This document shows positions 16,461 to 63,057 of a stretch of DNA of 64,000 nt, piece after piece (position 1 is the first letter of the stretch; each line of letters opens with the position of its first letter). Under the pieces are notes generated by a model. It saw only the letters and a program-made list of their open reading frames with translations, was not told where the DNA came from and did not search any database. The translations under genes and the position numbers were made by a program. Origin of the DNA: Podarcis pityusensis (lineage: Eukaryota); the NCBI GenBank assembly GCA_964106645.2, contig OZ067038.1; one strand, written 5' to 3'.

Positions 16461-16589
16461 TTGCGGAAAGGTCCTCCCGTGCCGCCACCTCCAAAACTCA
16501 CTCCGTCCAAGGAGATGAAGCAGGAGAACATCATCAACCTGTTTGATGACAATTTTGTCCCAGAGATCAGTGTGACAACCCCCTCACAG
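16461..16589 (+). CDS. BIN1: BIN1 exon 13 (12A, CLAP), [43 protein letters not shown]
   Basis: Acceptor atgcag, donor CAG|gttagc, 129 nt, phase 0-0. It carries an RxxPxxP SH3 ligand and the FxDxF AP-2 motif (FDDNF). Confidence 0.97.
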
Positions 16590-17855: not shown

Positions 17856-17909
17856 CGCGGTGGCCTGCGGCTTTTACCTCTTCCTCCTGTTCGACGGCCG
17901 AAACATTGC
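17856..17909 (+). CDS. Candidate additional BIN1 cassette exon, RGGLRLLPLPPVRRPKHC
   Basis: Branch-like cctgat, long pyrimidine tract and cag acceptor; donor TGC|gtgagg. It is 54 nt, phase 0-0 and open, with six CpGs in a CpG-poor intron. No transcript evidence is available. Confidence 0.6.
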
Positions 17910-20900
17910 GTGAGGGGCCTGGAGTTGGGAGAAAAGGCAAGTGTAGGCCACAAGTTACAAGGGTTGTGGGATTACCTCACAGTTGTGGGGATACAGGTCA
18001 TAGTTCTACAACAGATTAGGATTCCTTATTGAGGGTGGGGAGCAAAGGAAGATATTAAGCTGCCACTTAGCTAGCTTTAAACCTGATTTTTTTTAAAATA
18101 AATAAATAAATAAAAAGTAGGTCTTTGTCATTGCCAGAAACATTTATTGGAATGTTCTGAAACAAATTAACACAGAAATGAGCACCAAGTGTGGATTTCT
18201 GTCTGGCCATTTAGTAGCAACCATACATATATGGGCCAGTTCAAGTAGAACAGGGTGTGGAGCTCTTTGGAAGTGATGGGAGTTGGAGTCCAAAAACATC
18301 TGAAGGGCTTCTGGTTCCTCACCCCTGCAAGGGTGGAAACAAAAAGCAACAGATTGCAACATCTCTCTCCATCAGGACTTGATTTTAGAAGGTAAGGGGA
18401 ATGTTTATGTGTGGAAATCTCTTGAGAGATGACCAAAGGGAAGGTTCAGAAGTAAAGGAACTACAAGGGAAAAAAGAGGACCCTGTAGGGGAAAAAAAAG
18501 GCTTGTAGTACAAAATAAAAGAGGTTGTTGGGAGTAGTGTGTGGGAGTAGTGATTTGTTTACATTTGAGAGAGAGAAATAAATGAGCCTGTCTAGGAGAT
18601 CTTAGACTAAGGGACTTTTGGAAGAATGCCTGTGGAAAAACACCTGTAGAAAAATGTTATGTGAAAATGCAAAATCAATGATGAGCACAAGGTAGAATTA
18701 GTCTCACCCTGAGGTACTGCGAGATTATTGTTTCATGTGGCAGATTCTGAACAGCATTAGAGGCTATCCAAATTGTTCTTAATTTAGTATAATTTTAATG
18801 AGGTGGGAGAATGGAATTTGAAGCAGAAAATTCTTAAATGCGCTGCTAGCCATGCAAAAAGGATTTCACCACCTGTTAGTGGCACTTTTCTTTCTTTCTC
18901 AAAATCCTGATATGTAGGCGGTGTGGTTTTAAAGAGGTTAATTGTTAGTAACATGCAATTGGCCGAATTTATAGCTTCAGTGAAACGTACCAACAAGCAT
19001 TGCCTTTTCTTTTTGATTTTTCTTCCTAAAGATGAGAGCTCAGAGATAACAGTGGATACCATGGGGAGCTAGGAAGGAGAGCAGAGGCTTTGCATTAATG
19101 GGGAAGCAGAGACTAAAAGTGAGAAGAGTTGCACTTTGTAGAGTCTTTTGGTCAAGGGAACCAAGGAGCTGCCTTCAGTGTAGGAATTCTGTCTGTATAT
19201 GCCCCGTTCATTTTGTTATCTGAGAAAGCCGTGGGCCACTGAGCAACCTCCCATCCTTGTCCACACCTATCTTTTCCTTGTAGCATGCCTCAACAACTCT
19301 TACACCATGTTTTATATCATACGTTTCTGTGTAAAAACACTTGCCTAAACAGAGCATTCAGCTTGGGACGCATCCAGCATGGAGGACACCTGGCATGTAC
19401 AGGTTTCAAATGGATGGGTTTGAGTCCTAGAACAGAAACCATAGGGAAAAACCTATGATCAATGTATTTCATGTACCATATGTGATTTTTTTCTGTGTGT
19501 GTTGGGCTAATTATTTGGGAGGAGAGGGAGGGCAAGCTAACAAGAAAGAGGAACCCTCGGCACATGGTGCAGGTAACTCTGGGGTGACAGGTAAGCTTCT
19601 AGCATGGCTATACCCTTTTGACCTGAATTGGTTTTTAGTCAGGCACAGAAAATGAATACCTAGAAGGTCTTGCTTCAGTGGTAACCTACATAAGAAATAC
19701 TTAGGTGATCTGCTGTGAGTATTGTGTAACCTTTTAAAATCTAAATTTATTGGAGTTGAGATTATGAGACAGAAAACCGCCTTCATTGAAAGCTTGTTCT
19801 GATATTGGTAGGAACTAGTGAATGACACAAAAAAGTTAAAGTTGAAATATAAATTGCTGCTGCTTGGAAACTGTGTGGAAAAGAATGTGCTAGAAGTTTC
19901 TCTCTTGAAAGTATGTGGATATATCAAACTGATAAAGGGTTTTGCTTTGAAACAGCAGCAATATAGTTTTCCTCAGTTGGTGCATTTACGTTAGTTTTCA
20001 CCAGATATCCTAATAATTCAGAAATGTTTACTGCTGTGCCTTGGTTTGGTTTAGAAAGGTTACATTGCATTACTTTGCCTTAGGACCAGAAGAACTATCA
20101 GAGAAGTTGCTGAAATATTTGGACAGAGCTCCTTTCAGAAACAGCAAGCTGGGAAAAAAGGGGTGCCTTGTAAATCATCTTTTTAGGAATATGGACATTA
20201 GTCAAAATTTGAATGCTGCCACTGATGTTCTAATTTGCAACCCCAATAGAATTGCTTCTAGTTAATAAGATAACCTCCTGACTAAAAAGGGACCTTTTGG
20301 CTAGATATATAACTTGAAATGTATATAATAGAGAACTGGAATAATTTATTAATATTGGAAATAACGTCCGAATATGGAAAGCATTAGAATATGGGCAGGG
20401 GAAACAGATTGCAAAAGCTAAGATCTTAAACAAGGAATCTACTGTGTTTCTGACTATGATGATACAGATTTGCTGCTGTGAGGATCATAGAGAGGCTTCC
20501 ACTGAAAATGCTGTGCACATCATACATAGTTTCATTCTTTTAAGAAGTGCCTAAAGCAGTGGCCTAGCTGTGCTGAAAGTTGCATGTGGAAGTATCTTGG
20601 GTAGGATTTAGGGACCCTGTTTGGAAAGATCACAAGTGATAGTGACCTCAAGAAGACCCCTGATAAATATGATGGATGGTAACATGAAAACTGCTCAGGC
20701 TCTGTAGAATACTGATGCTTTGTTTTCACGGCTGCGTTTCTGCAAAAGTGTTGAGCGTACTGTGGCCACTGGGCACATGTGAGCAGTCATTGCTTGTACC
20801 ATAGAGTTGTATGCATCTTTTTTTGCACCTTCAGCTCCTGGGTAACACCTTCTGCATACCAGCCTGCATCCTATACCTGACTAACACGCAATACTGCTTT

Positions 20901-20919: not shown

Positions 20920-21030
20920 TTTGATGCCCCTGGGCCCTTCCAGGAGGGAGCCAGCCTGTTGGATTTTGATTTTGATCCCATTAAACCTGATAACAGCCCT
21001 GTAGGGAAGTCGCCTACGCCTGCTGCCCAG
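20920..21030 (+). CDS. BIN1: BIN1 exon 14 (CLAP), [37 protein letters not shown]
   Basis: Branch point ctgactaac, acceptor gcaag, donor CAG|gttggt, 111 nt, phase 0-0. Contains the clathrin box LLDFD. Confidence 0.93.
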
Positions 21031-22350: not shown

Positions 22351-22374
22351 TCTTTGCCTTGGGATTTATGGGAG
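22351..22374 (+). CDS. BIN1: BIN1 exon 15 microexon, SLPWDLWE (clathrin W-box)
   Basis: Acceptor gcttag, donor GAG|gtaaga, 24 nt. Contains the PWDLW motif. Confidence 0.95.
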
Positions 22375-24106
22375 GTAAGATTTCTATTAATATAGCTTTC
22401 AGTGCAATAAATTCTACCATGTGGTGCTTGGCATGTGTGAGTACTTCCTTCTGTCACTATCATGCAAAGATGATTATTCTTGTCTTGACCTTCCGTTCTC
22501 ATCCTCTTCAGTGCTATGAACTAAAGTGGTGTGGTACAGTTGCAACCTCTTCTGCCCTTTGTCTGTCACGCTGAGAAGAAGTCTTCATCCCCTGTGCTTT
22601 GATATTGCCTATTATTAATGGCATTGACTGAAGCACAAACCTTCTTGCTGCAATAATTGTAGACCTTGCTGCTACTTTTTACCTTGTCAAAAAACAAACA
22701 AACCCCTGCATGCCATTTCCTACCTCTCGATTGTGTAGTATGTATACTTCTCAACTACCACCAAACAATTCCTTATTCTATACATATATTTAGTATAATG
22801 CTGTGCTTGCTGATTTGCTGCCGTGGTTCACTAATAACAGAGATTGGAGATCTCTCCAGTACTGCTGGAGAAACGAACCTTTCCTCCTTTCTTATTATGC
22901 TGCCAGATATTACGCTGTAATAAATCAGTTTAAAAAGCCAATGGCTTGTAGTTTCCAGACTTTCTTCATAACATTTTGGGCATGTTGAGATATATAGCTT
23001 TGCTTGAGTCCACCTGCTAGCAAGTAACCTTTATTCTTTGCTTTTGTGCATTTCCTGTTGTCTTTATTAATTCTATATCTTCACAGGAGGATACTTCTTA
23101 TGTTCTAAGTTAAAATTTAAGTTTACTCATTTGGCTTACGTTATCTGCCATCAGATGTCTTTTGAGGTGTGATTGGCCTTTAAACAGAATTGGCCTACAC
23201 TGGTTTCCCATTGTAAATTCATCAAATTGTCTCAAGAAGTTGACTCCCTTGTCTTTCCTGACCCAAGAACCTTCACTATTACTTCTTCCTAAGCATTTTC
23301 TCTGCTGTTTTCCCTCCTCCCTTTCCTCCTCATATAAAGGTTTAGTGAATAGATTGTGTCCTCAGGATAGGTAGCCATTAGATTTAGATCAACCACCCCA
23401 GAAAAATGGTGCGCTGGGGAAACAAGCACCATATTTCTTCAAACAAATGTGTATGAATCCCCCCGCCTTCCATTATTTTCCTTGCTATTTTTCCTCATTG
23501 AAAATATATATTATCACACAGCAGGGTTTAACTGCACCAAAACATATAGCAGTCCAGTGAGTAAAGAATTGCTAGCTCAACCACCAAATTATCTGATTTA
23601 AATCTAAACATCATTGAGTACTGCATTACCAAAACTTCAGTGTAGGGAAGTGCAAGTTGACTCATTTCATTCTGTATAAAAGCAACACAGAGAAGCTAGA
23701 TAGCCCCCCAAATAAAGAAGTATGACAAGTCTCACCTTAGTTAAAATTTCTCAACAGAAGTTCTGGCTACTGATTCAGTAGCTTGCCACCCTAGTTAAAA
23801 AGCTTACTAAGCCTGACAGAAGGCATTGTTGTTCAAAATGTATTGTCAATAAAGCCAACTATTAAAGGCAGGAAGTGAGAAAAAGAATTGTAAGCTACTT
23901 GTGTGGGGTACTGTGGCCTGGCACCTTTCTGTGCAGTTGAGAGGAGCCCGATCAGATGAGAGATTGCAGTGGACTACCCATGTAGCTGTGCCTCAGCAAC
24001 TGTGGTTGTTGAATGGAAAGCCAGTATGCTGTGGCCTCTCTTACACAGTCATAGTGTATGTACAACTACTCCAGAAAAATGGTGCAATGTGGAAACAAGC
24101 ACCATA

Positions 24107-24485
24107 CAGTGGTGCCCCGCAAGACGAATGCCTCGCAAGACGGAAAACCCGCTAGACGAAAGGGTTTTCCGTTTTGGAGGTGCTTCGCAAAACAAATTTC
24201 CTATGTGCTTGCTTCGCAAGACGAAAATGTCTTGCGAGTTCCTGCGGGGTTTTTTTCCTCCCCCCCCTTTTTCCCAAGCCGCTAAACCGCTTATCAGCTG
24301 ATCGTTAAGCCGCTTAACAGCTGATCGCTAAGGCGCTTATCAGCTGATCCGCTAAGCCCGCTAAGCCGCTAATACTGTAGCGCTAATCCGCTAAACCGCT
24401 AATGGGCTTGCTTCGCAAGACGAAAAAACCCGCAAGATGAAGAGACTCGCGGAACGGATTCTTTTCGTCTTGCGAGGCACCACTG
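24107..24485. mobile_element. Tigger/mariner-like MITE, relatively young
   Basis: TIRs cagtggtgccccgcaagacg / cgtcttgcgaggcaccactg with TA TSD. CpGs are retained and there are internal ccgctaa repeats. An empty-site paralog lies at 23390-23451. Confidence 0.9.
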
Positions 24486-25070
24486 TATTTCTTCAAACAA
24501 ATGTGATCTATATTTTCCCAGCTTTAGTTGTGATATAGGATGTTAAATACCTACCCTAAAGTAGATAGAGACTATGAACCACCAATGTTTTGCTTCTCTC
24601 TGAACTGCAACCTTTAACCTAAGATATCTTCTGCTGCTATTTGCTCTGCTTGCTTTTGTAATATCCTTATGTCATGCTGACGGCGTGCTTCTATAGTTAT
24701 TGCTGAAACCATTATTGGCTGAACAATTCATTAATTTCCGATTCAGAATATAGATGTTTTTAAGTGGAACAGTTCTCCATGAAAGGTCATTTAATCCATG
24801 CTGATATTATCACTGTATGTAGTTTGCTTCTTGTCAGGAACTACCTTTAAGTCTATTTAGCAGTGTTTCGTTGCTAGTTAAGCATTTACCTAAAAGCAAA
24901 TACATTTAGTGGTCGTTCCTTCTTTAAAACCCTGCTCCCACCCTCTGCCAGCAATGGCTATTCTTTAATATATATTTTTAAGGACATAATCACCTCCCCC
25001 CCAGGTTCCATCCAAAATTATGGCACATTTGACTCTTACCTGTTCAACAGTTCTATTTACCCTGGGATTA

Positions 25071-25294
25071 CCGTATTTTTTGCTCTCTAAGACGCACCCG
25101 ACCACAAGACGCACCTAGTTTTTGGAGGAGGAAAACAAGGGAAAAAAAATTCTGTGCAGTGAAAGCAGCAATCCCTCTTGCTGTTCTTGCTTCTGTGATA
25201 GCTGCGCAGCCTGCATTCACTCCGTACGACGCACACACATTTCCCCTTACTTTTTAGGAGGGAAAAAGTGAGTCTTATAGAGCAAAAAATACGG
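25071..25294. mobile_element. Tc1/mariner-type MITE inserted in duplication copy A only
   Basis: 16-bp perfect TIR ccgtattttttgctct / agagcaaaaaatacgg, TA TSD at 25069-70 and 25295-96. Copy B has the empty site gggatta-tttcattg. Confidence 0.92.
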
Positions 25295-25426
25295 TATTTC
25301 ATTGTCTACTCTGTCTTACTTCTCACTGCACTCTTCTCATTTTTGTAACTTCATGTAACCATGCCTACTGCTATCTCCTCCCATCTCTGTTTCTCTCTCC
25401 TACCTCCTTCAAATTCTGTCCATCAG

Positions 25427-25546
25427 CCGGAAAAGACTCCATCTAGCAGCGTTCAATCTATGGATCAGTTTCCGGCCGATAATCCTAGCAATAGTGCGTT
25501 CGAGGTGGACTGGCCTGACCAGCCCACTGAGACTAAGATCAGCCAA
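25427..25546 (+). CDS. BIN1: BIN1 exon 16, copy a, PEKTPSSSVQSMDQFPADNPSNSAFEVDWPDQPTETKISQ
   Basis: Acceptor catcag, donor CAA|gtaagt, 120 nt, phase 0-0. Its position and AFEVDWP resemble human exon 16 (TFAVSWP). Whether this copy is spliced is unknown. Confidence 0.75.
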
Positions 25547-26050
25547 GTAAGTGAAAGTATTTGAAGTGATCATACATTTGAAATTGTCTTGTTCTGGCTG
25601 GTGTGCTCTAGCACAAGCCTGATTCAGTTGTTATTCTTTGGAATGCATTATGCTGGGGCAAATTTATGACCTTTTGCACCCAGCACTCTTCAAAAGGAAT
25701 TAGAATTTACCCATTCCCTAAGCACAATAGTAAAGCACATCTCCTTAACCGTTTATCTGAACTGGGGGGAAACTGGTGTGGTCTAGTGAGTAAAAGTAAT
25801 AGCTTGGCACGGAAATTCTAGAATTATTTTATCATTTGTTTTAGGGATTGGTGAGCAGCCGTGTACCCATAATAGAGATGCATTGCATCCCTTGAAGCTG
25901 AATGTTCAGAAAACATTGGAGGAGGGTTCTCTGAGTGTTCAACTTAATATTTGAAGGGTTCGATGCCAGCCCACCTCTGCCTGTTTCCCTCTCTCCCAAG
26001 GAAAAGGACTAACTGTGGGGAAGTCAGAATGGGTATCAGGTGGTGGGAGA

Positions 26051-27070
26051 GTGATGTAGAGAAACACTCTTTTATTTTCTTTTGGAATATTTACTGCTAA
26101 ACTGCCTAATAAAAATGCTTCCAGTTTCTTTACAAATGTATGTTTTAGCATTTTTTTTAGTTCCTCGTAAATCATGTCCCAATTTTTTTTAATTTGGGGA
26201 CAAGTCTGCCACTTGTGGAAAAAGGTTCCTATGGTTTGTTTACACCTCCAACACTTGTTACTATTGTTTTTATTAATTTTAGCTAATTTGGATGGGGTCA
26301 GGTACCATCTGTAGGTCATTTTCATAAACTTTTCTTTAATCAGATAGCACACTATAAATTTTAAATCTTTTTCCCCCATAATTCTTCCCATTTTTCCATT
26401 TCAATTGGGTAGCCGAAATGAGCTCACTTCACCATCACTTCCTTTACTTTTTCATCTTTCAAATAATAATAATCTATATGTTTTTGATAATGTCTTCCTA
26501 TTATTTAATATTAATTCTTTTTCTAGGTCTTACATCTTTATATCAAATCCATTTGTTTTTTAATGTAATTTAAAGATTTCATTTAGGTGGTAATATTGTA
26601 GCCAGTTCATCCCTGTCTGTTTAAGTTCTTCATACCCTTTAAGTTTTAATTGGTTATTTTCTTCTTCTAATATTTCTTTATAGGTGAGCCAATTAATTTC
26701 CATGTTTTTCTTTTTCACTGCTATTGCCTCTACTGGAGACAACCATCAAGGTTTTTTTTTGGGTTCCAATAGTTTATTTCTCCCCCATACTGTGAAAAGT
26801 GATCTCCTTCTTATATGGTTAAGGAATCCTCTGTGCATTTTAACTTTGTCATATCCGAGATAACCATGCCAGTCGAACCTATTGTCCCGGCCTTCAATGT
26901 CTAATATATTGGCATTTTTTAGTAGTATCCATTCTTTGAGCCATACTAAACATGCAGCCTCGTAATATAATTTAAAGCCTGGCAGCACGAACCCTCCTCT
27001 GTCTTTTACTTCCATTAACAGTTTAAACTTAATCCTTGGCTTTTTGCCCTGCCATATAAATCTAGCCAGG
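26051..27070 (-). mobile_element. L1-clade LINE ORF2 C-terminal fragment (frameshifted, no 3' tail)
   Basis: ORFs 26746-27135 (RFIWQGKKPRIK...GGFVLPGFKLYYEA), 26560-26742 and 25939-26391 (CWRC...FH..QTCP zinc knuckle) form an L1 post-RT region. Confidence 0.88.
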
Positions 27071-27183
27071 TCTAGGGGCAACTTTGCCTTCTGTTGCACC
27101 CCTTTCTCTTTCGTCTTGCTGCGCGTCTGTCTCAAGATGGCAGGAGCACAAACTACAACCTGACACTGAGCGTGCTAGTCTGG

Positions 27184-29166
27184 AAGTCTTTCTAGCAGTG
27201 TTTTGTTGCTAGTTAAGCATTTGCCTTCGTTAAATATTCTCAAAGCCATTGAGAGAGGGTATTCTGTAGATCCAGCTCTATGTTTTGTACAACAGCAAAA
27301 CAAGCTACCCTGGATGGGGTTGCGTAACCCACCCACAGCAAAAGACAATTCAATGAGACCTCGATGAGCATTGTGTTGAGGGTGTGTATAGGGAATGAAT
27401 ATTCAAATGCACACCTGCACCAGTTGTTCACACAGAAGTTTACTCTACAAGTTGATTTCCCATGCTATTTCCTCCTGAAGAGAGTCAGGGGTTGTGGATT
27501 GTGATACATATTGTGACATCAAAGACCCATATACTGGTGGGATGGGAAAGCCATTTTAGAATCAAACAGCCTGATATAAATGTAACTGATGCAGATATGG
27601 GCTGCCATAACTCAGAGAATCTGCTTTGCATGCAGAAGGTCTCAGTTTTCAATTCCCAGCATCTCCAGCTAGAGCAGGAAGAGACTGCTGTCTGAAACCC
27701 AGTCAGGGTAGACAATGGTGAGCTAGATGGCTTTCTATATTCTGATATTTTCCCCAGAAGGTGTTTGATCCAAAGACACAAAGAAGAGATAGGGGTTTTA
27801 ATCTTTATAATACGACTTTTGCAACAAAATAAGCTATACAGTTGAGAGTCCAAATAAAAGGACATGAATATTTTATGACATAAAATAAATTACCCCAAAT
27901 GTTATAAAATAAGATAAACCAAAATATCAGATAAGCTTGTTAAGTCCATACTCAAATTCACCTCACAGTTTCAGGCTTTAATTTAGCTCACTATAGATCA
28001 TATATCTATATCTATATACAGTATCTACATATCTGTCTGTATATATTTATATATACTGGTAGATATATATAGATATAGATATACATATTCTGTGACTGGA
28101 AAACCACAGCTTAAAAACAAATACATTTAGTGGTCTTTCCTTCTTTAAACCCTTGCTCCCACCCTCTGCCAGCAATGGTTATTCCTTTTATATATATTTT
28201 TAAAGGACATAATCACTTCCTTCTGTGTTATGGAATTAAATCTACTGAGAGGCTAAATTCAGTGACAAAATTCAAAATGTGGCCCCATTCCCATCTTCTG
28301 CAGCAGAGAAGGTGTCACTGAGACAGCTCAGCACTGCCTTTATGGATTTGGCAGTGCATAGAAGCAGTGAGGGAGAAAGCAAGAGGTACTTAATGATGTA
28401 GGAGGGATTTTTAGAAATATCCAGGGATGCCTTGACAAGGCTAAACCAGGACAGCATCCTCTGGAGAACGGTGCTGCCTGATGCTTGACACTGGCAGTCT
28501 TCCAGGGCAGTTCTACTTGCACTGCCTGTATCCATGGAAGCTCCATCTGCACCCTAACAATCCACTTCATCTCAAGGTGAACTACCCTGGTCAATAAATG
28601 GAGGCACTTTTGTCAGACCATTGGCTGCAGGGGTAATGTTGACCCCACTTTCCCCCCAGGATCCATCCAAAATTATGGCGCATTTGACTCTTACCTGTTC
28701 AGCAGTTCTATTTACCCTGGGATTATTTCATTGTCTACTCTGTCTTACTTCTCACTGCACTCTTCTCATTTTTGTATCTTCATGTAACCATGCCTACGAC
28801 TATCTCCTCCCATCTCTGTTTCTCTCTCCTCCCTCCTTCAAATTCCACCCATCAGCCGGAAAAGACTCCATCTAGCAGCGGTCAATCTATGGATCAGTTT
28901 CCGGCCGATAATCCTAGCAATAGTGCGTTCGAGGTGGACTGGCCTGACCAGCCCACTGAGACTAAGATCAGCCAAGTAAGTGAAAGTATTTGAAGTGATC
29001 ATACATTTGAAATTGTCTTGTTCTGGCTGGTGTGCTCTAGCACAAGCCTGACTCAGTTGTTATTCTTTGGAATGCATTAGGCTGGGGCAAATTTATGACC
29101 TCTTGCACCTAGCACTCTTCCAAAGGAATTAGAATTTACCCATTCCCTAGGCACGATAGTAAAGCA
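27184..29166 (+). repeat. Tandem segmental duplication, copy B (contains exon 16b)
   Basis: Homologous to 24849-25737. It carries ~885-nt and ~430-nt segments absent from copy A and lacks the MITE. Confidence 0.93.
28856..28975 (+). CDS. BIN1: BIN1 exon 16, copy b, PEKTPSSSGQSMDQFPADNPSNSAFEVDWPDQPTETKISQ
   Basis: Acceptor catcag, donor CAA|gtaagt, 120 nt, phase 0-0. It differs from copy a by one base (gtt/ggt, V/G). Confidence 0.8.
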
Positions 29167-29779
29167 GGGTATAAATAATAAATTATTATTATTATTATTA
29201 TTAATGAGAAGGGGCAGGCAGGCAGAGACTACAACCTCCCCTCCATCCAAACAAACAAAGGCTTACCCACCTACCACTCTGATAATTGTCTTTTCTTTGT
29301 GTTTTCCATGTAAGGAAGTTTTTTTAATATTTGATGCTTTGATGTGTTTTAATAGTCTGTTGGGAGCTGCCTAGTCAGATGGGCAGCATATAAATAATAG
29401 AATTATTATTAAGTTCATCAATTCCTAATTTGTTCAAGAGAGATTTTGCTGTTAGAAGTGTCAAATAAAGCAAGGGTTGCTATGTTCTGCTGCATGTGGG
29501 ATGGGAGTGAGGGGGAGAATTTTACCTAGGCATTGTTTATCCCGCATTGCTGAGTTTCCCTGTTGTCAGAATGCATACTGGTTCCTTGTGTGTGGCTTTG
29601 TTTCAGTGGAGTGTGGCCCACAATTATTTATACCAAGTGTGGAATATGTGTGTATTCTTTGGTATGATTCTCCTGAAATCATTGGAATAAGCTGGTGTGC
29701 TTTTAGTGAGATTTCGTTTTCTGCACACTGACAATAATGTTTTTGCAAAATTGGAGCATTTATCACTTAGCAAGTTTCA

Positions 29780-31440: not shown

Positions 31441-31752
31441 GCTTGCATTCACACGGCAGTTTATTTTGTTTTCCTGACATTTCCCTAACATAAATTTCTG
31501 CCTTATATTCCAGCTTTCACACAACGATAAAGACACTTCCAGAAACAGAGCGGAATGTAGCTTGAGTTTAGTGCTCATTTCTGCGTTATTTGCAAATGGA
31601 TTTTTTTTCTTCTAGAAATGAGTGCTAAACTTGTGTTATAGTCTGCTTTATTTCTGGAAACGGTTTTTATGTCACCTGAAAGTTAAAATATATGGCAGAA
31701 ATCAACTAGGAAACACAGGGAAAATATAATAAACTGCTGTGTGAATGCAGCC
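31441..31752. mobile_element. PIF/Harbinger-like palindromic MITE
   Basis: TIRs gcttgcattcacac..cagtttatt / aataaactg..gtgtgaatgcagcc, with TTA on both sides (31438-40 and 31753-55). Confidence 0.75.
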
Positions 31753-32421
31753 TTACTGTAAGATTGAGATGCATGCAATCCTATTGATTAACTGCTGAGA
31801 GGTAGGAAATTGGATGGGTTCTTACTAGTCTCTTCTTCAGTGGCCAGGTGGTGGCAGTCTTTGATAGCATTGATTCTCACTATATGCTGCTAACTCTGCA
31901 CAGCCTTATGTGGTATAACTGATCGGCAGGGTGTATGCCATCTTCATATCTGATCTGATGGTCTATTATTTTAACTGCTGCTGACTTAGAACGGTGAACT
32001 TGGTGACCAGTTGACCCTGGTCCAAAAGGCAGCTTCTGTTGTTCTGTTGTCATAAGGGTCTGCTGTTATTAGGAAGCGCACTGCCAGATTTCATCAGACT
32101 TTCCTTTCCAAGTCCTGCAAGCAGGAATTTTCTCAGCCACATTCAAACGTTTTACTCAAGGTGAAGTGCGTCAGTTTTTGAAGCTATGCAACTGTATGAA
32201 GAGATACAGCAGTTTTTCGCAGCCATAAAAGAAATGGTAGAAACTATGCAATCATGCAGAAGATAGAACCTTTTGGGCACACTGTTGGCTTATTTGGCAA
32301 AAGACAGGGTCAGCACTGGAAAACTTGAGAACATGAGGTTGTTTTCAAATGTGAGGTTTTAAATAGCTCTTGCTTCAAGCTGATTTGTAATGCAAATGCG
32401 AAACCTTTATTAGCTGGATCA

Positions 32422-33616: not shown

Positions 33617-33718
33617 CCCACAGAAGCCGCTCCTGCTGGTGCTGAGGCAGCTGGCAAAGAAGCAGCAGCAGCTGGAGCTGAAGCAGCTAAAACCGAAACT
33701 GACTCAGGATCTGCCTCA
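33617..33718 (+). CDS. BIN1: BIN1 exon 17 (MYC-binding region, alternative), PTEAAPAGAEAAGKEAAAAGAEAAKTETDSGSAS
   Basis: Acceptor ttgcag, donor TCA|gtaaga, 102 nt, phase 0-0. Ala/Glu-rich like human exon 17. Confidence 0.88.
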
Positions 33719-34727: not shown

Positions 34728-34838
34728 AGCTCTCTGCCTGCTGTAGTTGTGGAGACCTTCCCAGCCACAGTCAATGGAACAGTTGAAAGTGGAGCCGCTT
34801 CTGAAAGGGCTGACATGCCACCAGGTTTCCTGTTTAAG
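34728..34838 (+). CDS. BIN1: BIN1 exon 18, [37 protein letters not shown]
   Basis: Acceptor gcttag, donor AAG|gtgagt, 111 nt. The N-terminal half is nearly identical to human. Confidence 0.97.
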
Positions 34839-57245: not shown

Positions 57246-57597
57246 TGGTGGGGATGCAGGTGGCGCTGTGGTCTAAAACCATAGAGCCTAGGGCTTTCCA
57301 ATCAGAAGGTCGGAGGTTTGGGGTGAGCTCCCGTTGCTCGGTCCCAGTTCCTGCCCACCTAGCAGTTCGAAAGCATGTCAAAGTGCAAGTAGATAAATAG
57401 GTACCGCTCAGGCGGGTAGGTAAACGGCATTTCTGTGTGCTGCTGTGGTTCGCCAGAAGTGGCTTAGTCATGCTGGCCACATAACCCGGAAGCTGTCTGC
57501 AGACAAACGCCAGCTCCCTTGGCCTATAGAGCGAGATGAGCGCACAACCCCAGAGTCGTCTGCGACTGGACCTAACGGTCAGGGCTACCTTAACCTT
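57246..57597 (+). mobile_element. Sauria SINE, full length
   Basis: tRNA-like head ggtggcgctgtggt, the characteristic body and an (acctt)n tail. 13-bp TSD tattacttcactt at 57233-45 and 57598-610. Confidence 0.92.
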
Positions 57598-58729
57598 TAT
57601 TACTTCACTTATTTCAGAACATGTGAAGCCAACCCTGCTGCGTTAGGGGCTCCCCTACTTGTTCAGCTGACTTGCTCCATTATCTTGCTCCAAAGTCTTG
57701 CTTGCTCCATTGGAGTACCACATCTCCCACAGCCTTAAATGTCCTGGTGTGCCGTCTGGAGCAATCCACAATCTTTGGTCAAAGTGTATCTTTTCAGTCC
57801 CCTTTCAGCCAGGTATCCCTTTATTTACTTTGGGACACACAGCTAGGCCCATCCTCTTCCTCCCTCCTACAATGGACAGGTTCTTGCCATAAAATCTTGG
57901 TCTCTCTGAGCAGTCCCAACCATCTTCAGCTGTGGCATGAGAAACAAAACAACCTCTGCTTAGGCTTCGCTCCCTTGCAAAACAGTAAGGAGATTGTCTG
58001 CATTCATTTCTTTTACTAGTCAAACAGCCCTCAGAGCTGCTATAAAATCCACATTGGTTCAAGTGAACCAGGAAAATGGCAAAATTGGCTATTTTTGTCC
58101 TGTTAAAAATACAGCTGTCTTTGAGGTGAAGCATCTTAAGGTGGCACTGTTGCCTCATGGTTAGAATAGTTCGCTCTTGCTTGTTTTGTATTTATTACAA
58201 ATGCTCAGTGCCAGAGATTTTGCCCTGAGTCGGGAGGAAGCCAGGCTCACACCACAGCTTGAGAGTTTGCTTTGAGCATTGGGTTAACAATGTAATGGAT
58301 CCGTGGGACACTGTGGGTGAAGACAGATGGAGGATGAAAACAGAGCTCAAAGCAAGTTCTCAAGCTGCGGTGTGGGCCCTGACTTCCTTCTGACTTCACA
58401 ACTGAAATGACAGGCATAGGGTGCATTGCCAAAAGAAAGAGAGGACACAATTTTGCATATACCAATGTATAGATATAGACACAAATTTAAATATATTTCC
58501 TCTAATTGAAATACAAATATAATACAGCTCTCCAAAGCAGGAAACACATCAGATAACTTGTGTATCTCCTCAGTCTGTTGACCGGTGCTGTTAGCTGTTG
58601 ACAGACAACTTTAGGCCTCCTGCTCGCCCTCCTTTCTTAGAGTTTCTTATCTTTAAATCAGACTTGGATTGGACAGCCCCCAAACAGAGGACACCTTCAG
58701 ATATTGTACAAATTGATAGTGCAACTGCA

Positions 58730-62742: not shown

Positions 62743-63057
62743 CTAGGACTTGCCGATCAGAAGGTTGGCGGTTCGAATCCCCGCGATGAGGTGAGCTCCC
62801 ATTGCTCGGTCCCTGCTTCTGCCAACCTAGCAGTTCAAAAGCACGTCAAAGTGCAAGTAGATGAATAGGTACCACTCCAGTGGGAAGGTAAACGGCATTT
62901 CCGTGCGCTGCTCTGGTTCGCCAGAAGCGGATTAGTCATGCTGGCCACATGACCCGGAAGCTGTACGCCGGCTCCCTCGGCTAATAAAGTGAGATGAGCA
63001 CCGCAACCTCAGAGTGGGTCACGGCTGGACCTAATGGTCAGGGGTCCCTTTACCTTT
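62743..63057 (+). mobile_element. Sauria SINE, 5'-truncated
   Basis: Homologous to 57246-57597 and ends ggggtccctttaccttt. Confidence 0.9.

What the first reader, a model, noticed from the sequence alone, without database searches (positions are those of the whole stretch)
24849..29166. Tandem duplication of BIN1 CLAP exon 16: two intact in-frame copies
Seen: the 120-nt exons at 25427-25546 and 28856-28975 have the same catcag acceptor end and CAA|gtaagt donor, both are phase 0-0, and they differ only by V/G at codon 9. They are 3.3 kb apart, so nothing sterically forces mutual exclusion. Known: human BIN1 has a single exon 16, and tandem exon duplication is a recognised source of new alternative splicing. 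Inference: this lineage could make 16a, 16b, 16a+16b (40 extra aa, doubled FEVDW) or skipped isoforms, changing the linker between the clathrin/AP-2 motifs and SH3. Short reads would multi-map, so annotation could easily miss it.
Basis: partly seen in the sequence, partly recalled or inferred. Interest (0 to 1): 0.9.

Follow-up and report, generated by a model that had tools for sequence, protein, structure and literature searches.

The report
Young duplicated BIN1 exon in lizards
A group of related lizards carries two intact copies of one optional exon of the membrane-shaping gene BIN1; the duplication is real and shared between species, but whether both copies are used is unshown, and other reptiles get by without this exon.

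Summary
Observation confirmed. BIN1 exon 16 (120 nt, phase 0-0) is present twice, at 25427-25546 and 28856-28975. The copies differ at one base (V/G at codon 9; G is derived). They lie in a duplicated unit of about 670 bp, and each copy has its own insertions. It is not an assembly artefact: copy-specific junctions recur in another sample and in two other species labels (2.8-3.8% diverged), and the shared core collapses at double depth. Splicing was not shown: two probable RNA runs of unknown tissue gave flat intronic cover and no listed exon junction. The exon differs less than its flanks (1/120 vs 28/545, P=0.02). One neutral copy is not excluded (P=0.18), and the identical tract runs into unconserved intron, which suggests gene conversion. 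Nothing enforcing mutual exclusion was found. Best reading: two independent neuronal cassettes, with a possible 40-aa longer linker. Exon 16 is labile: single in geckos, decayed in garter snake, undetectable in green turtle and a probable bird. This is a new instance of a known process, of modest interest. The scan noted this same stretch before, but not on other DNA.

The parts
24849..25737 (+). Copy A of the duplicated unit (about 670 bp ancestral sequence plus one insertion)
25071..25294 (.). 224-bp high-copy MITE with terminal inverted repeats and a TA target duplication (Tc1/mariner-like by inference); private to copy A, at the 5' edge of the AG-free zone
   Evidence: I3; very high contig depth, and its junction with the core present in organism E
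25283..25424 (+). 142-nt AG-exclusion zone / pyrimidine-rich tract before exon 16a; 81% identical to gecko over 25295-25426
25427..25546 (+). BIN1 exon 16a, 40 codons, phase 0-0, Val at codon 9 (ancestral state)
25420..25622 (+). Near-identical tract between the copies (1 mismatch in 203 bp; counterpart 28849-29051); candidate gene-conversion tract
25738..27183 (.). Non-duplicated 1,446-bp spacer containing repeat sequence, with a weak (sub-threshold) zf-RVT hit on the minus strand, LINE-like by inference
27184..29166 (+). Copy B of the duplicated unit, split by two private insertions
27226..28111 (.). 886-bp insertion private to copy B (includes a high-copy repeat near 27552-27715)
28220..28651 (.). 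432-bp insertion private to copy B; bridged by contigs of three species labels
28706..28853 (+). 148-nt AG-exclusion zone before exon 16b
28856..28975 (+). BIN1 exon 16b, 40 codons, phase 0-0, derived Gly at codon 9
16461..16589 (+). BIN1 exon 13 (proline-rich SH3 ligand and FxDxF-type motif)
20920..21030 (+). BIN1 exon 14
22351..22374 (+). BIN1 exon 15 (24-nt W-box exon), upstream neighbour
33617..33718 (+). BIN1 exon 17, downstream neighbour

Best explanation
A short genomic tandem duplication copied BIN1 exon 16 with all its local splicing signals (long AG-free pyrimidine tract, acceptor, donor) before several related lizard species split. Insertions then landed separately in each copy. These steps are shown. 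Inferred: because both copies carry the same signals, lie 3.3 kb apart and keep frame, each acts as an independent cassette under the neuron-biased CLAP splicing programme. That gives skip, 16a, 16b and 16a+16b transcripts rather than an either/or switch. Double inclusion would add 40 probably disordered residues between the exon-13 proline-rich motif and the SH3 domain (exons 13-18: 199 to 239 aa) and could slightly loosen the closed, self-bound state. The effect is probably small and tolerated rather than adaptive. Near-identity of the exons reflects moderate constraint plus, probably, gene conversion.
For: Intact AG/GT and frame in both copies, identical donors. AG-free zones of 142 and 148 nt match the 145-nt zone of the single gecko exon; such zones mark alternatively spliced exons (PMC1431707). 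Copy-specific junctions in runs X2, X8, X15 and X17, and core depth 43 vs 20-25 in X8. Exon 1/120 vs intron 28/545 differences, Fisher P=0.021; P=0.013 against both copies being neutral. No inverted repeat among the 25 longest that could act as docking/selector for the copies. Exons 13-16 are variably included and the CLAP domain is brain-specific (PMC7389646; PMC6246682). The CLAP-SH3 open/closed equilibrium is documented (PMC6246682).
Against: No spliced junction seen: X17's contig 28825-29166 runs unbroken through intron-exon-intron, X15's contig 25378-25534 crosses the acceptor unbroken, and exon depth is only about twice intron depth (tissue unknown, RNA status a guess, 28 joints not displayed). 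One constrained copy plus one neutral copy is not rejected (P=0.18). No lacertid BIN1 protein was retrieved to show either isoform. One organism-E contig carries 4 gap letters of unlisted position that might fall in an exon.
Confidence: 0.5

Rival explanations
1. Only one copy is used. The other is a passenger pseudoexon that has not yet decayed or is kept looking intact by gene conversion.
For: P=0.18 for at most 1 change if one copy is neutral. The identical tract includes 76 nt of downstream intron that is only 58% identical to gecko, whereas the squamate-conserved upstream tract (81%) has 7 A/B differences; longest identical run 170 bp, P=0.01-0.04. This pattern fits conversion better than selection. 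Copy B has derived T-to-C changes at -10 and -8 of its acceptor and the derived Gly; copy A has a MITE at the edge of its AG-free zone. The exon is dispensable in other reptiles.
Against: Neither copy shows a disabling change in the window. The gap-free core contigs in X8 and X17 show few differences, although these are collapsed mosaics. Identical donors and near-identical acceptors should both be recognised.
Confidence: 0.28
2. The two copies have already become a regulated mutually exclusive pair (16a or 16b).
For: Tandem exon duplications are often linked to mutually exclusive choice (PMC9013439). Long AG-free zones occur at known mutually exclusive exons such as those of tropomyosin and actinin (PMC1431707).
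Against: The 3.3-kb intron rules out steric clash; both exons keep frame, so NMD cannot enforce the choice; both are GT-AG; no competing pairing was found. The AG-free zone predates the duplication (gecko). The products would differ by a single residue.
Confidence: 0.1
3. Both copies are nearly silent, and exon 16 is on its way out in this lineage as in the snake.
For: No spliced form in X15 or X17. Decay in Thamnophis and absence in turtle and probable bird.
Against: Both-neutral rejected at P=0.013. Organism E shows no substitution in 108 exon nt at about 4% background (P about 0.01). The sampled tissues may simply be non-neural.
Confidence: 0.1
4. Assembly artefact (false haplotype duplication).
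For: Run X2 gave no contigs over 27224-27551 and a loose end at 27054; no single contig spans the whole region.
Against: The spacer matches neither outer flank. The copies carry private insertions. X8 contigs bridge every copy-specific junction except the MITE edges (24934-25055, 25696-26311, 26284-28000, 28155-28710) at single depth with the core at double depth; X15 (including the MITE-core junction) and X17 agree.
Confidence: 0.02

Closest known systems
Tandem exon duplication (general class; PMC9013439, PMC9741552)
   Same: A single internal, frame-preserving exon copied in tandem with flanking intron, in a gene with nervous-system and muscle roles.
   Different: Catalogued functional cases are mostly ancient substitution events (PMC9741552 abstract). 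This pair is young (about 5% intronic divergence), 99% identical, and not shown to be used.
Mutually exclusive duplicated exons (e.g. tropomyosin, alpha-actinin, U2AF1 3/Ab)
   Same: Homologous equal-length exons; long AG-exclusion zone suggesting a distant branch point.
   Different: The intron of 3.3 kb puts the branch point far from the upstream donor; no frame or structure constraint was found; exclusivity is untested.
Vertebrate BIN1 (amphiphysin 2) CLAP cassette exons 13-16
   Same: Same gene, exon order, phases and position; exon 16 is homologous to the gecko, elephant and sawshark exon.
   Different: Two copies instead of one. BIN1 is not mentioned in the two tandem-duplication papers checked, and no paper reporting this duplication was found.

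Membership tests
BIN1 exon 16 ortholog | Lies between exon 15 (W-box) and exon 17 of BIN1, phase 0-0 | tested here: met
BIN1 exon 16 ortholog | Sequence homology to exon 16 of annotated BIN1 proteins | tested here: met
   75% aa to Gekko exon, E=1.6e-23; Sphaerodactylus P0031 residues 392-436; weak to elephant, E=0.01
Tandem exon duplication | Two homologous exon copies in the same orientation in one gene, present in genomic DNA | tested here: met
Tandem exon duplication | Single copy in outgroups | tested here: met
   one copy in Gekko kuhli (a 0.76-kb stretch between L003 and L006 not seen) and one decayed copy in Thamnophis (1.3-kb N gap in that interval)
Functional duplicated cassette exons | Both copies spliced into mRNA | tested here: inconclusive
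   no junction in two RNA-like contig sets of unknown tissue
Functional duplicated cassette exons | Purifying selection on both copies | tested here: inconclusive
   both-neutral rejected (P=0.013), one-neutral not (P=0.18); gene conversion possible
Mutually exclusive exons | One and only one copy per transcript | not testable with these tools
   needs brain long reads
Mutually exclusive exons | An enforcing mechanism (steric, U2/U12, frame/NMD, competing RNA pairing) | tested here: not met
   3,309-nt intron, both GT-AG, both 120 nt; none among the 25 longest inverted repeats. Protein-mediated exclusion was not testable.
Distant-branch-point exons | AG-exclusion zone of 100 nt or more | tested here: met
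   142, 148 and gecko 145 nt
Distant-branch-point exons | Mapped distant branch point | not testable with these tools
   no consensus yTnAy of the strong yTrAy type in either zone; needs lariat mapping

The most novel reading that the evidence does not exclude
Both copies are spliced in neurons, and 16a+16b is a major brain isoform fixed across a lizard radiation. This would be a young exon duplication caught before divergence, lengthening the BIN1 self-inhibition linker, in an exon that other reptile lineages lost independently. It would be a natural series (0, 1, 2 copies) for testing how duplicated exons start out and whether linker length tunes BIN1 SH3 availability.
Probability: 0.3. Interest if true: 0.5.

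Novelty: new member of a known kind. Interest (0 to 1): 0.3.

Why it matters
How newly duplicated exons behave before they diverge (both included, one silenced, or exclusive) is hard to study, because most catalogued pairs are very old. This pair is young, fixed across species and distinguishable by one base, so the question is directly testable with brain RNA. Together with the apparent loss of exon 16 in snake, turtle and a probable bird, it suggests this part of the BIN1 CLAP region is a tolerant spacer, which is a useful note for BIN1 isoform biology. It does not point to a new mechanism.

Tried and rejected
Protein searches with exon 16 alone found nothing (50%-cluster library; word-index search limited to 56-177 aa; ESM Atlas; Pfam); these blanks say nothing about full-length lizard isoforms. 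P0031 and a spacer ORF had no contig on record. A 20-nt inverted pair bracketing both copies (22709-22728 / 31797-31816) is rare in shuffles (P about 0.02, picked post hoc) but its 3' arm is not conserved in gecko, so I do not rely on it. False duplication was rejected. Literature searches found no report of this duplication. Hits that might be human (P0007, P0008, P0010, P0011, P0022, P0023, P0025, P0026, P0028, P0029) were not fetched or compared.

Full report
Observation. The window has no N. Two 120-nt exons at 25427-25546 and 28856-28975 translate openly and differ at one base (nt 26, T/G, Val/Gly). They share the catcag acceptor end and CAA|gtaagt donor. They sit in a 443-bp core that is 96.6% identical without gaps. 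Further matching pieces upstream define a unit of about 670 bp: copy A 24849-25737 and copy B 27184-29166.

Gene. Exon 13 and exon 19 hit solved BIN1/amphiphysin-2 chains. The gecko BIN1 protein P0031 maps exon by exon on the window, and its residues 392-436 hit both copies. The order is exon 13 (16461-16589), 14 (20920-21030), 15 (22351-22374), 16a, 16b, 17 (33617-33718), 18 (34728-34838), all phase 0. The species is a squamate.

Anatomy of the duplication. Copy A carries a 224-bp MITE with terminal inverted repeats and a TA target duplication (25071-25294). Copy B carries insertions of 886 and 432 bp. A 1,446-bp spacer matches neither outer flank and has a weak, sub-threshold zf-RVT hit. Co-duplicated intron differs at 28 of 545 positions (5.1%).

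Reality and spread. Four public runs were laid on 24600-29500. In X8 (another species label), single-depth contigs (20-25) bridge the A-type upstream segment (24934-25055), the A-end/spacer junction (25696-26311), the spacer, B start and first insertion (26284-28000), and the second insertion (28155-28710). The core collapses into one contig at depth 43. X15 and X17 (a third label) show the same junctions, including the MITE-core junction. X2 (same label, another sample) has both upstream contexts and a core-plus-spacer contig at depth 34, close to the roughly 30 expected for a double-depth core. Ortholog divergence outside the core is 0.8% (X2), 2.8% (X8) and 3.6-3.8% (X15, X17). The duplication and its insertions therefore predate these species splits, and an assembly artefact is excluded. 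No single contig spans the whole region, and X2 lacks contigs over 27224-27551, which I cannot explain.

Outgroups. Gekko kuhli has one intact exon 16 and Sphaerodactylus proteins include it once, both with Val at codon 9, so the Gly of 16b is derived. Elephant and sawshark proteins contain the homologous exon. In Thamnophis the exon is recognisable but dead: acceptor AG and donor GT are gone, with a frameshift and a stop. No trace was found in the gap-free exon 15-17 intervals of green turtle (12.4 kb) or of a Logan contig I take for a bird (3.1 kb), although the neighbouring exons align well. Exon 16 also changes faster than its neighbours: 10/40 aa between lizard and gecko, against 0/43, 3/37 and 2/37. 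It is an old but labile exon.

Splicing signals. Both copies keep a long AG-free pyrimidine tract (142 and 148 nt). The gecko has 145 nt, and this tract is 81% identical to gecko, nearly as conserved as the exon (86%). Zones of 100 nt or more occur in about 1% of human introns and are enriched for cassette exons (PMC1431707). The feature predates the duplication, so it does not by itself imply mutual exclusion. The 3,309-nt intron, GT-AG sites and equal in-frame lengths exclude steric, spliceosome-type and NMD enforcement, and no docking/selector pairing appeared among the longest inverted repeats.

Selection or conversion. The exons differ at 1/120 against 28/545 in intron (Fisher P=0.021). 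Both copies being neutral is unlikely (P=0.013); one neutral copy is not excluded (P=0.18). The near-identical tract (1 mismatch in 203 bp) extends over 76 nt of downstream intron that is only 58% identical to gecko, while the strongly conserved upstream tract has 7 differences. The longest identical run, 170 bp, has P=0.01-0.04. That pattern fits gene conversion at least as well as selection on both exons. Derived changes fall on both copies, so neither is plainly the dying one.

Expression. Not shown. X15 and X17 (RNA by guess, tissue unknown) cover the introns evenly at depth 5-9 and the exon at only about twice that. Contigs cross the exon boundaries unbroken, and no 25546-to-28856 joint is among those listed (28 joints were not displayed). 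This is what non-neural tissue or DNA would give, since CLAP exons are brain-specific (PMC6246682; PMC7389646), so it neither supports nor refutes use in brain. One X15 contig (25378-25534) has 4 gap letters whose position is not listed; a slip in the pyrimidine tract seems likelier than an exon frameshift, but this is unresolved. Protein searches did not reach a lacertid BIN1. A joined spliced model was not searched.

Mechanism. Shown: genomic duplication with intact signals, fixed across species. Inferred (0.5): independent cassette behaviour in neurons, giving skip, single and double inclusion. Double inclusion would lengthen exons 13-18 from 199 to 239 aa, between the exon-13 ligand and the SH3 domain whose intramolecular pairing sets the open/closed state of neuronal BIN1 (PMC6246682). 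A modest effect is plausible but untested, and I found no reported function for the FEVDW stretch. Rivals: one passenger copy (0.28), mutual exclusion (0.10), both nearly silent (0.10), artefact (0.02).

Comparison and verdict. This is a new member of a well-known class, tandem exon duplication (PMC9013439, PMC9741552). It is not shown to be a mutually exclusive pair, and no report of it was found. Its value is as a young, easily scored test case and as one end of a 0-1-2 copy series in reptiles. Interest 0.3.

Noticed in passing
L004:18695-18815 (Thamnophis); L005:26026-38458 (Chelonia); L001:4995-8058 (probable bird): BIN1 exon 16 is a decayed pseudoexon in garter snake and undetectable in green turtle and a probable bird, while intact in geckos, elephant and sawshark: apparent repeated loss in reptiles.
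   Followed up: partly
window 17856-17909: Candidate 54-nt phase-0 proline-rich exon after exon 13. The same peptide follows exon 13 in the Gekko kuhli model P0015, and the region aligns in gecko, snake and turtle DNA.
   Followed up: partly
window 22709-22728 and 31797-31816: 20-nt, 90% complementary inverted pair that would loop out both exon-16 copies; P about 0.02 in shuffles, 3' arm not conserved in gecko. A TGCATG (RBFOX-type) motif at the start of the 5' arm is conserved in gecko.
   Followed up: partly
window 28703-28706: A tandem cagcag acceptor bounds the AG-free zone of copy B and reads in frame into exon 16b (270-273 nt); a possible longer 3' splice variant. In copy A the MITE displaces this site.
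   Followed up: no
window 27054-28094 in run X2: Another sample of the same species label has a loose end at 27054 and no contigs over 27224-27551: a polymorphic structure or filtered records.
   Followed up: no
window 25378-25534 in run X15: Contig with 4 gap letters of unlisted position: an intronic slip or an exon frameshift in one copy in organism E.
   Followed up: no
window 19145-19884: Long intronic stretch conserved in gecko, with parts in snake (19206-19392) and turtle (19549-19628), between exons 13 and 14; a possible regulatory element or further cassette.
   Followed up: no
window 24104-24488 and 31444-31749: Two further elements with terminal inverted repeats (MITE-like) in the introns around exon 16.
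   Followed up: no
window 57288-57598 / 62743-63057: A dispersed repeat pair of about 320 bp at 79% identity, probably a transposon.
   Followed up: no
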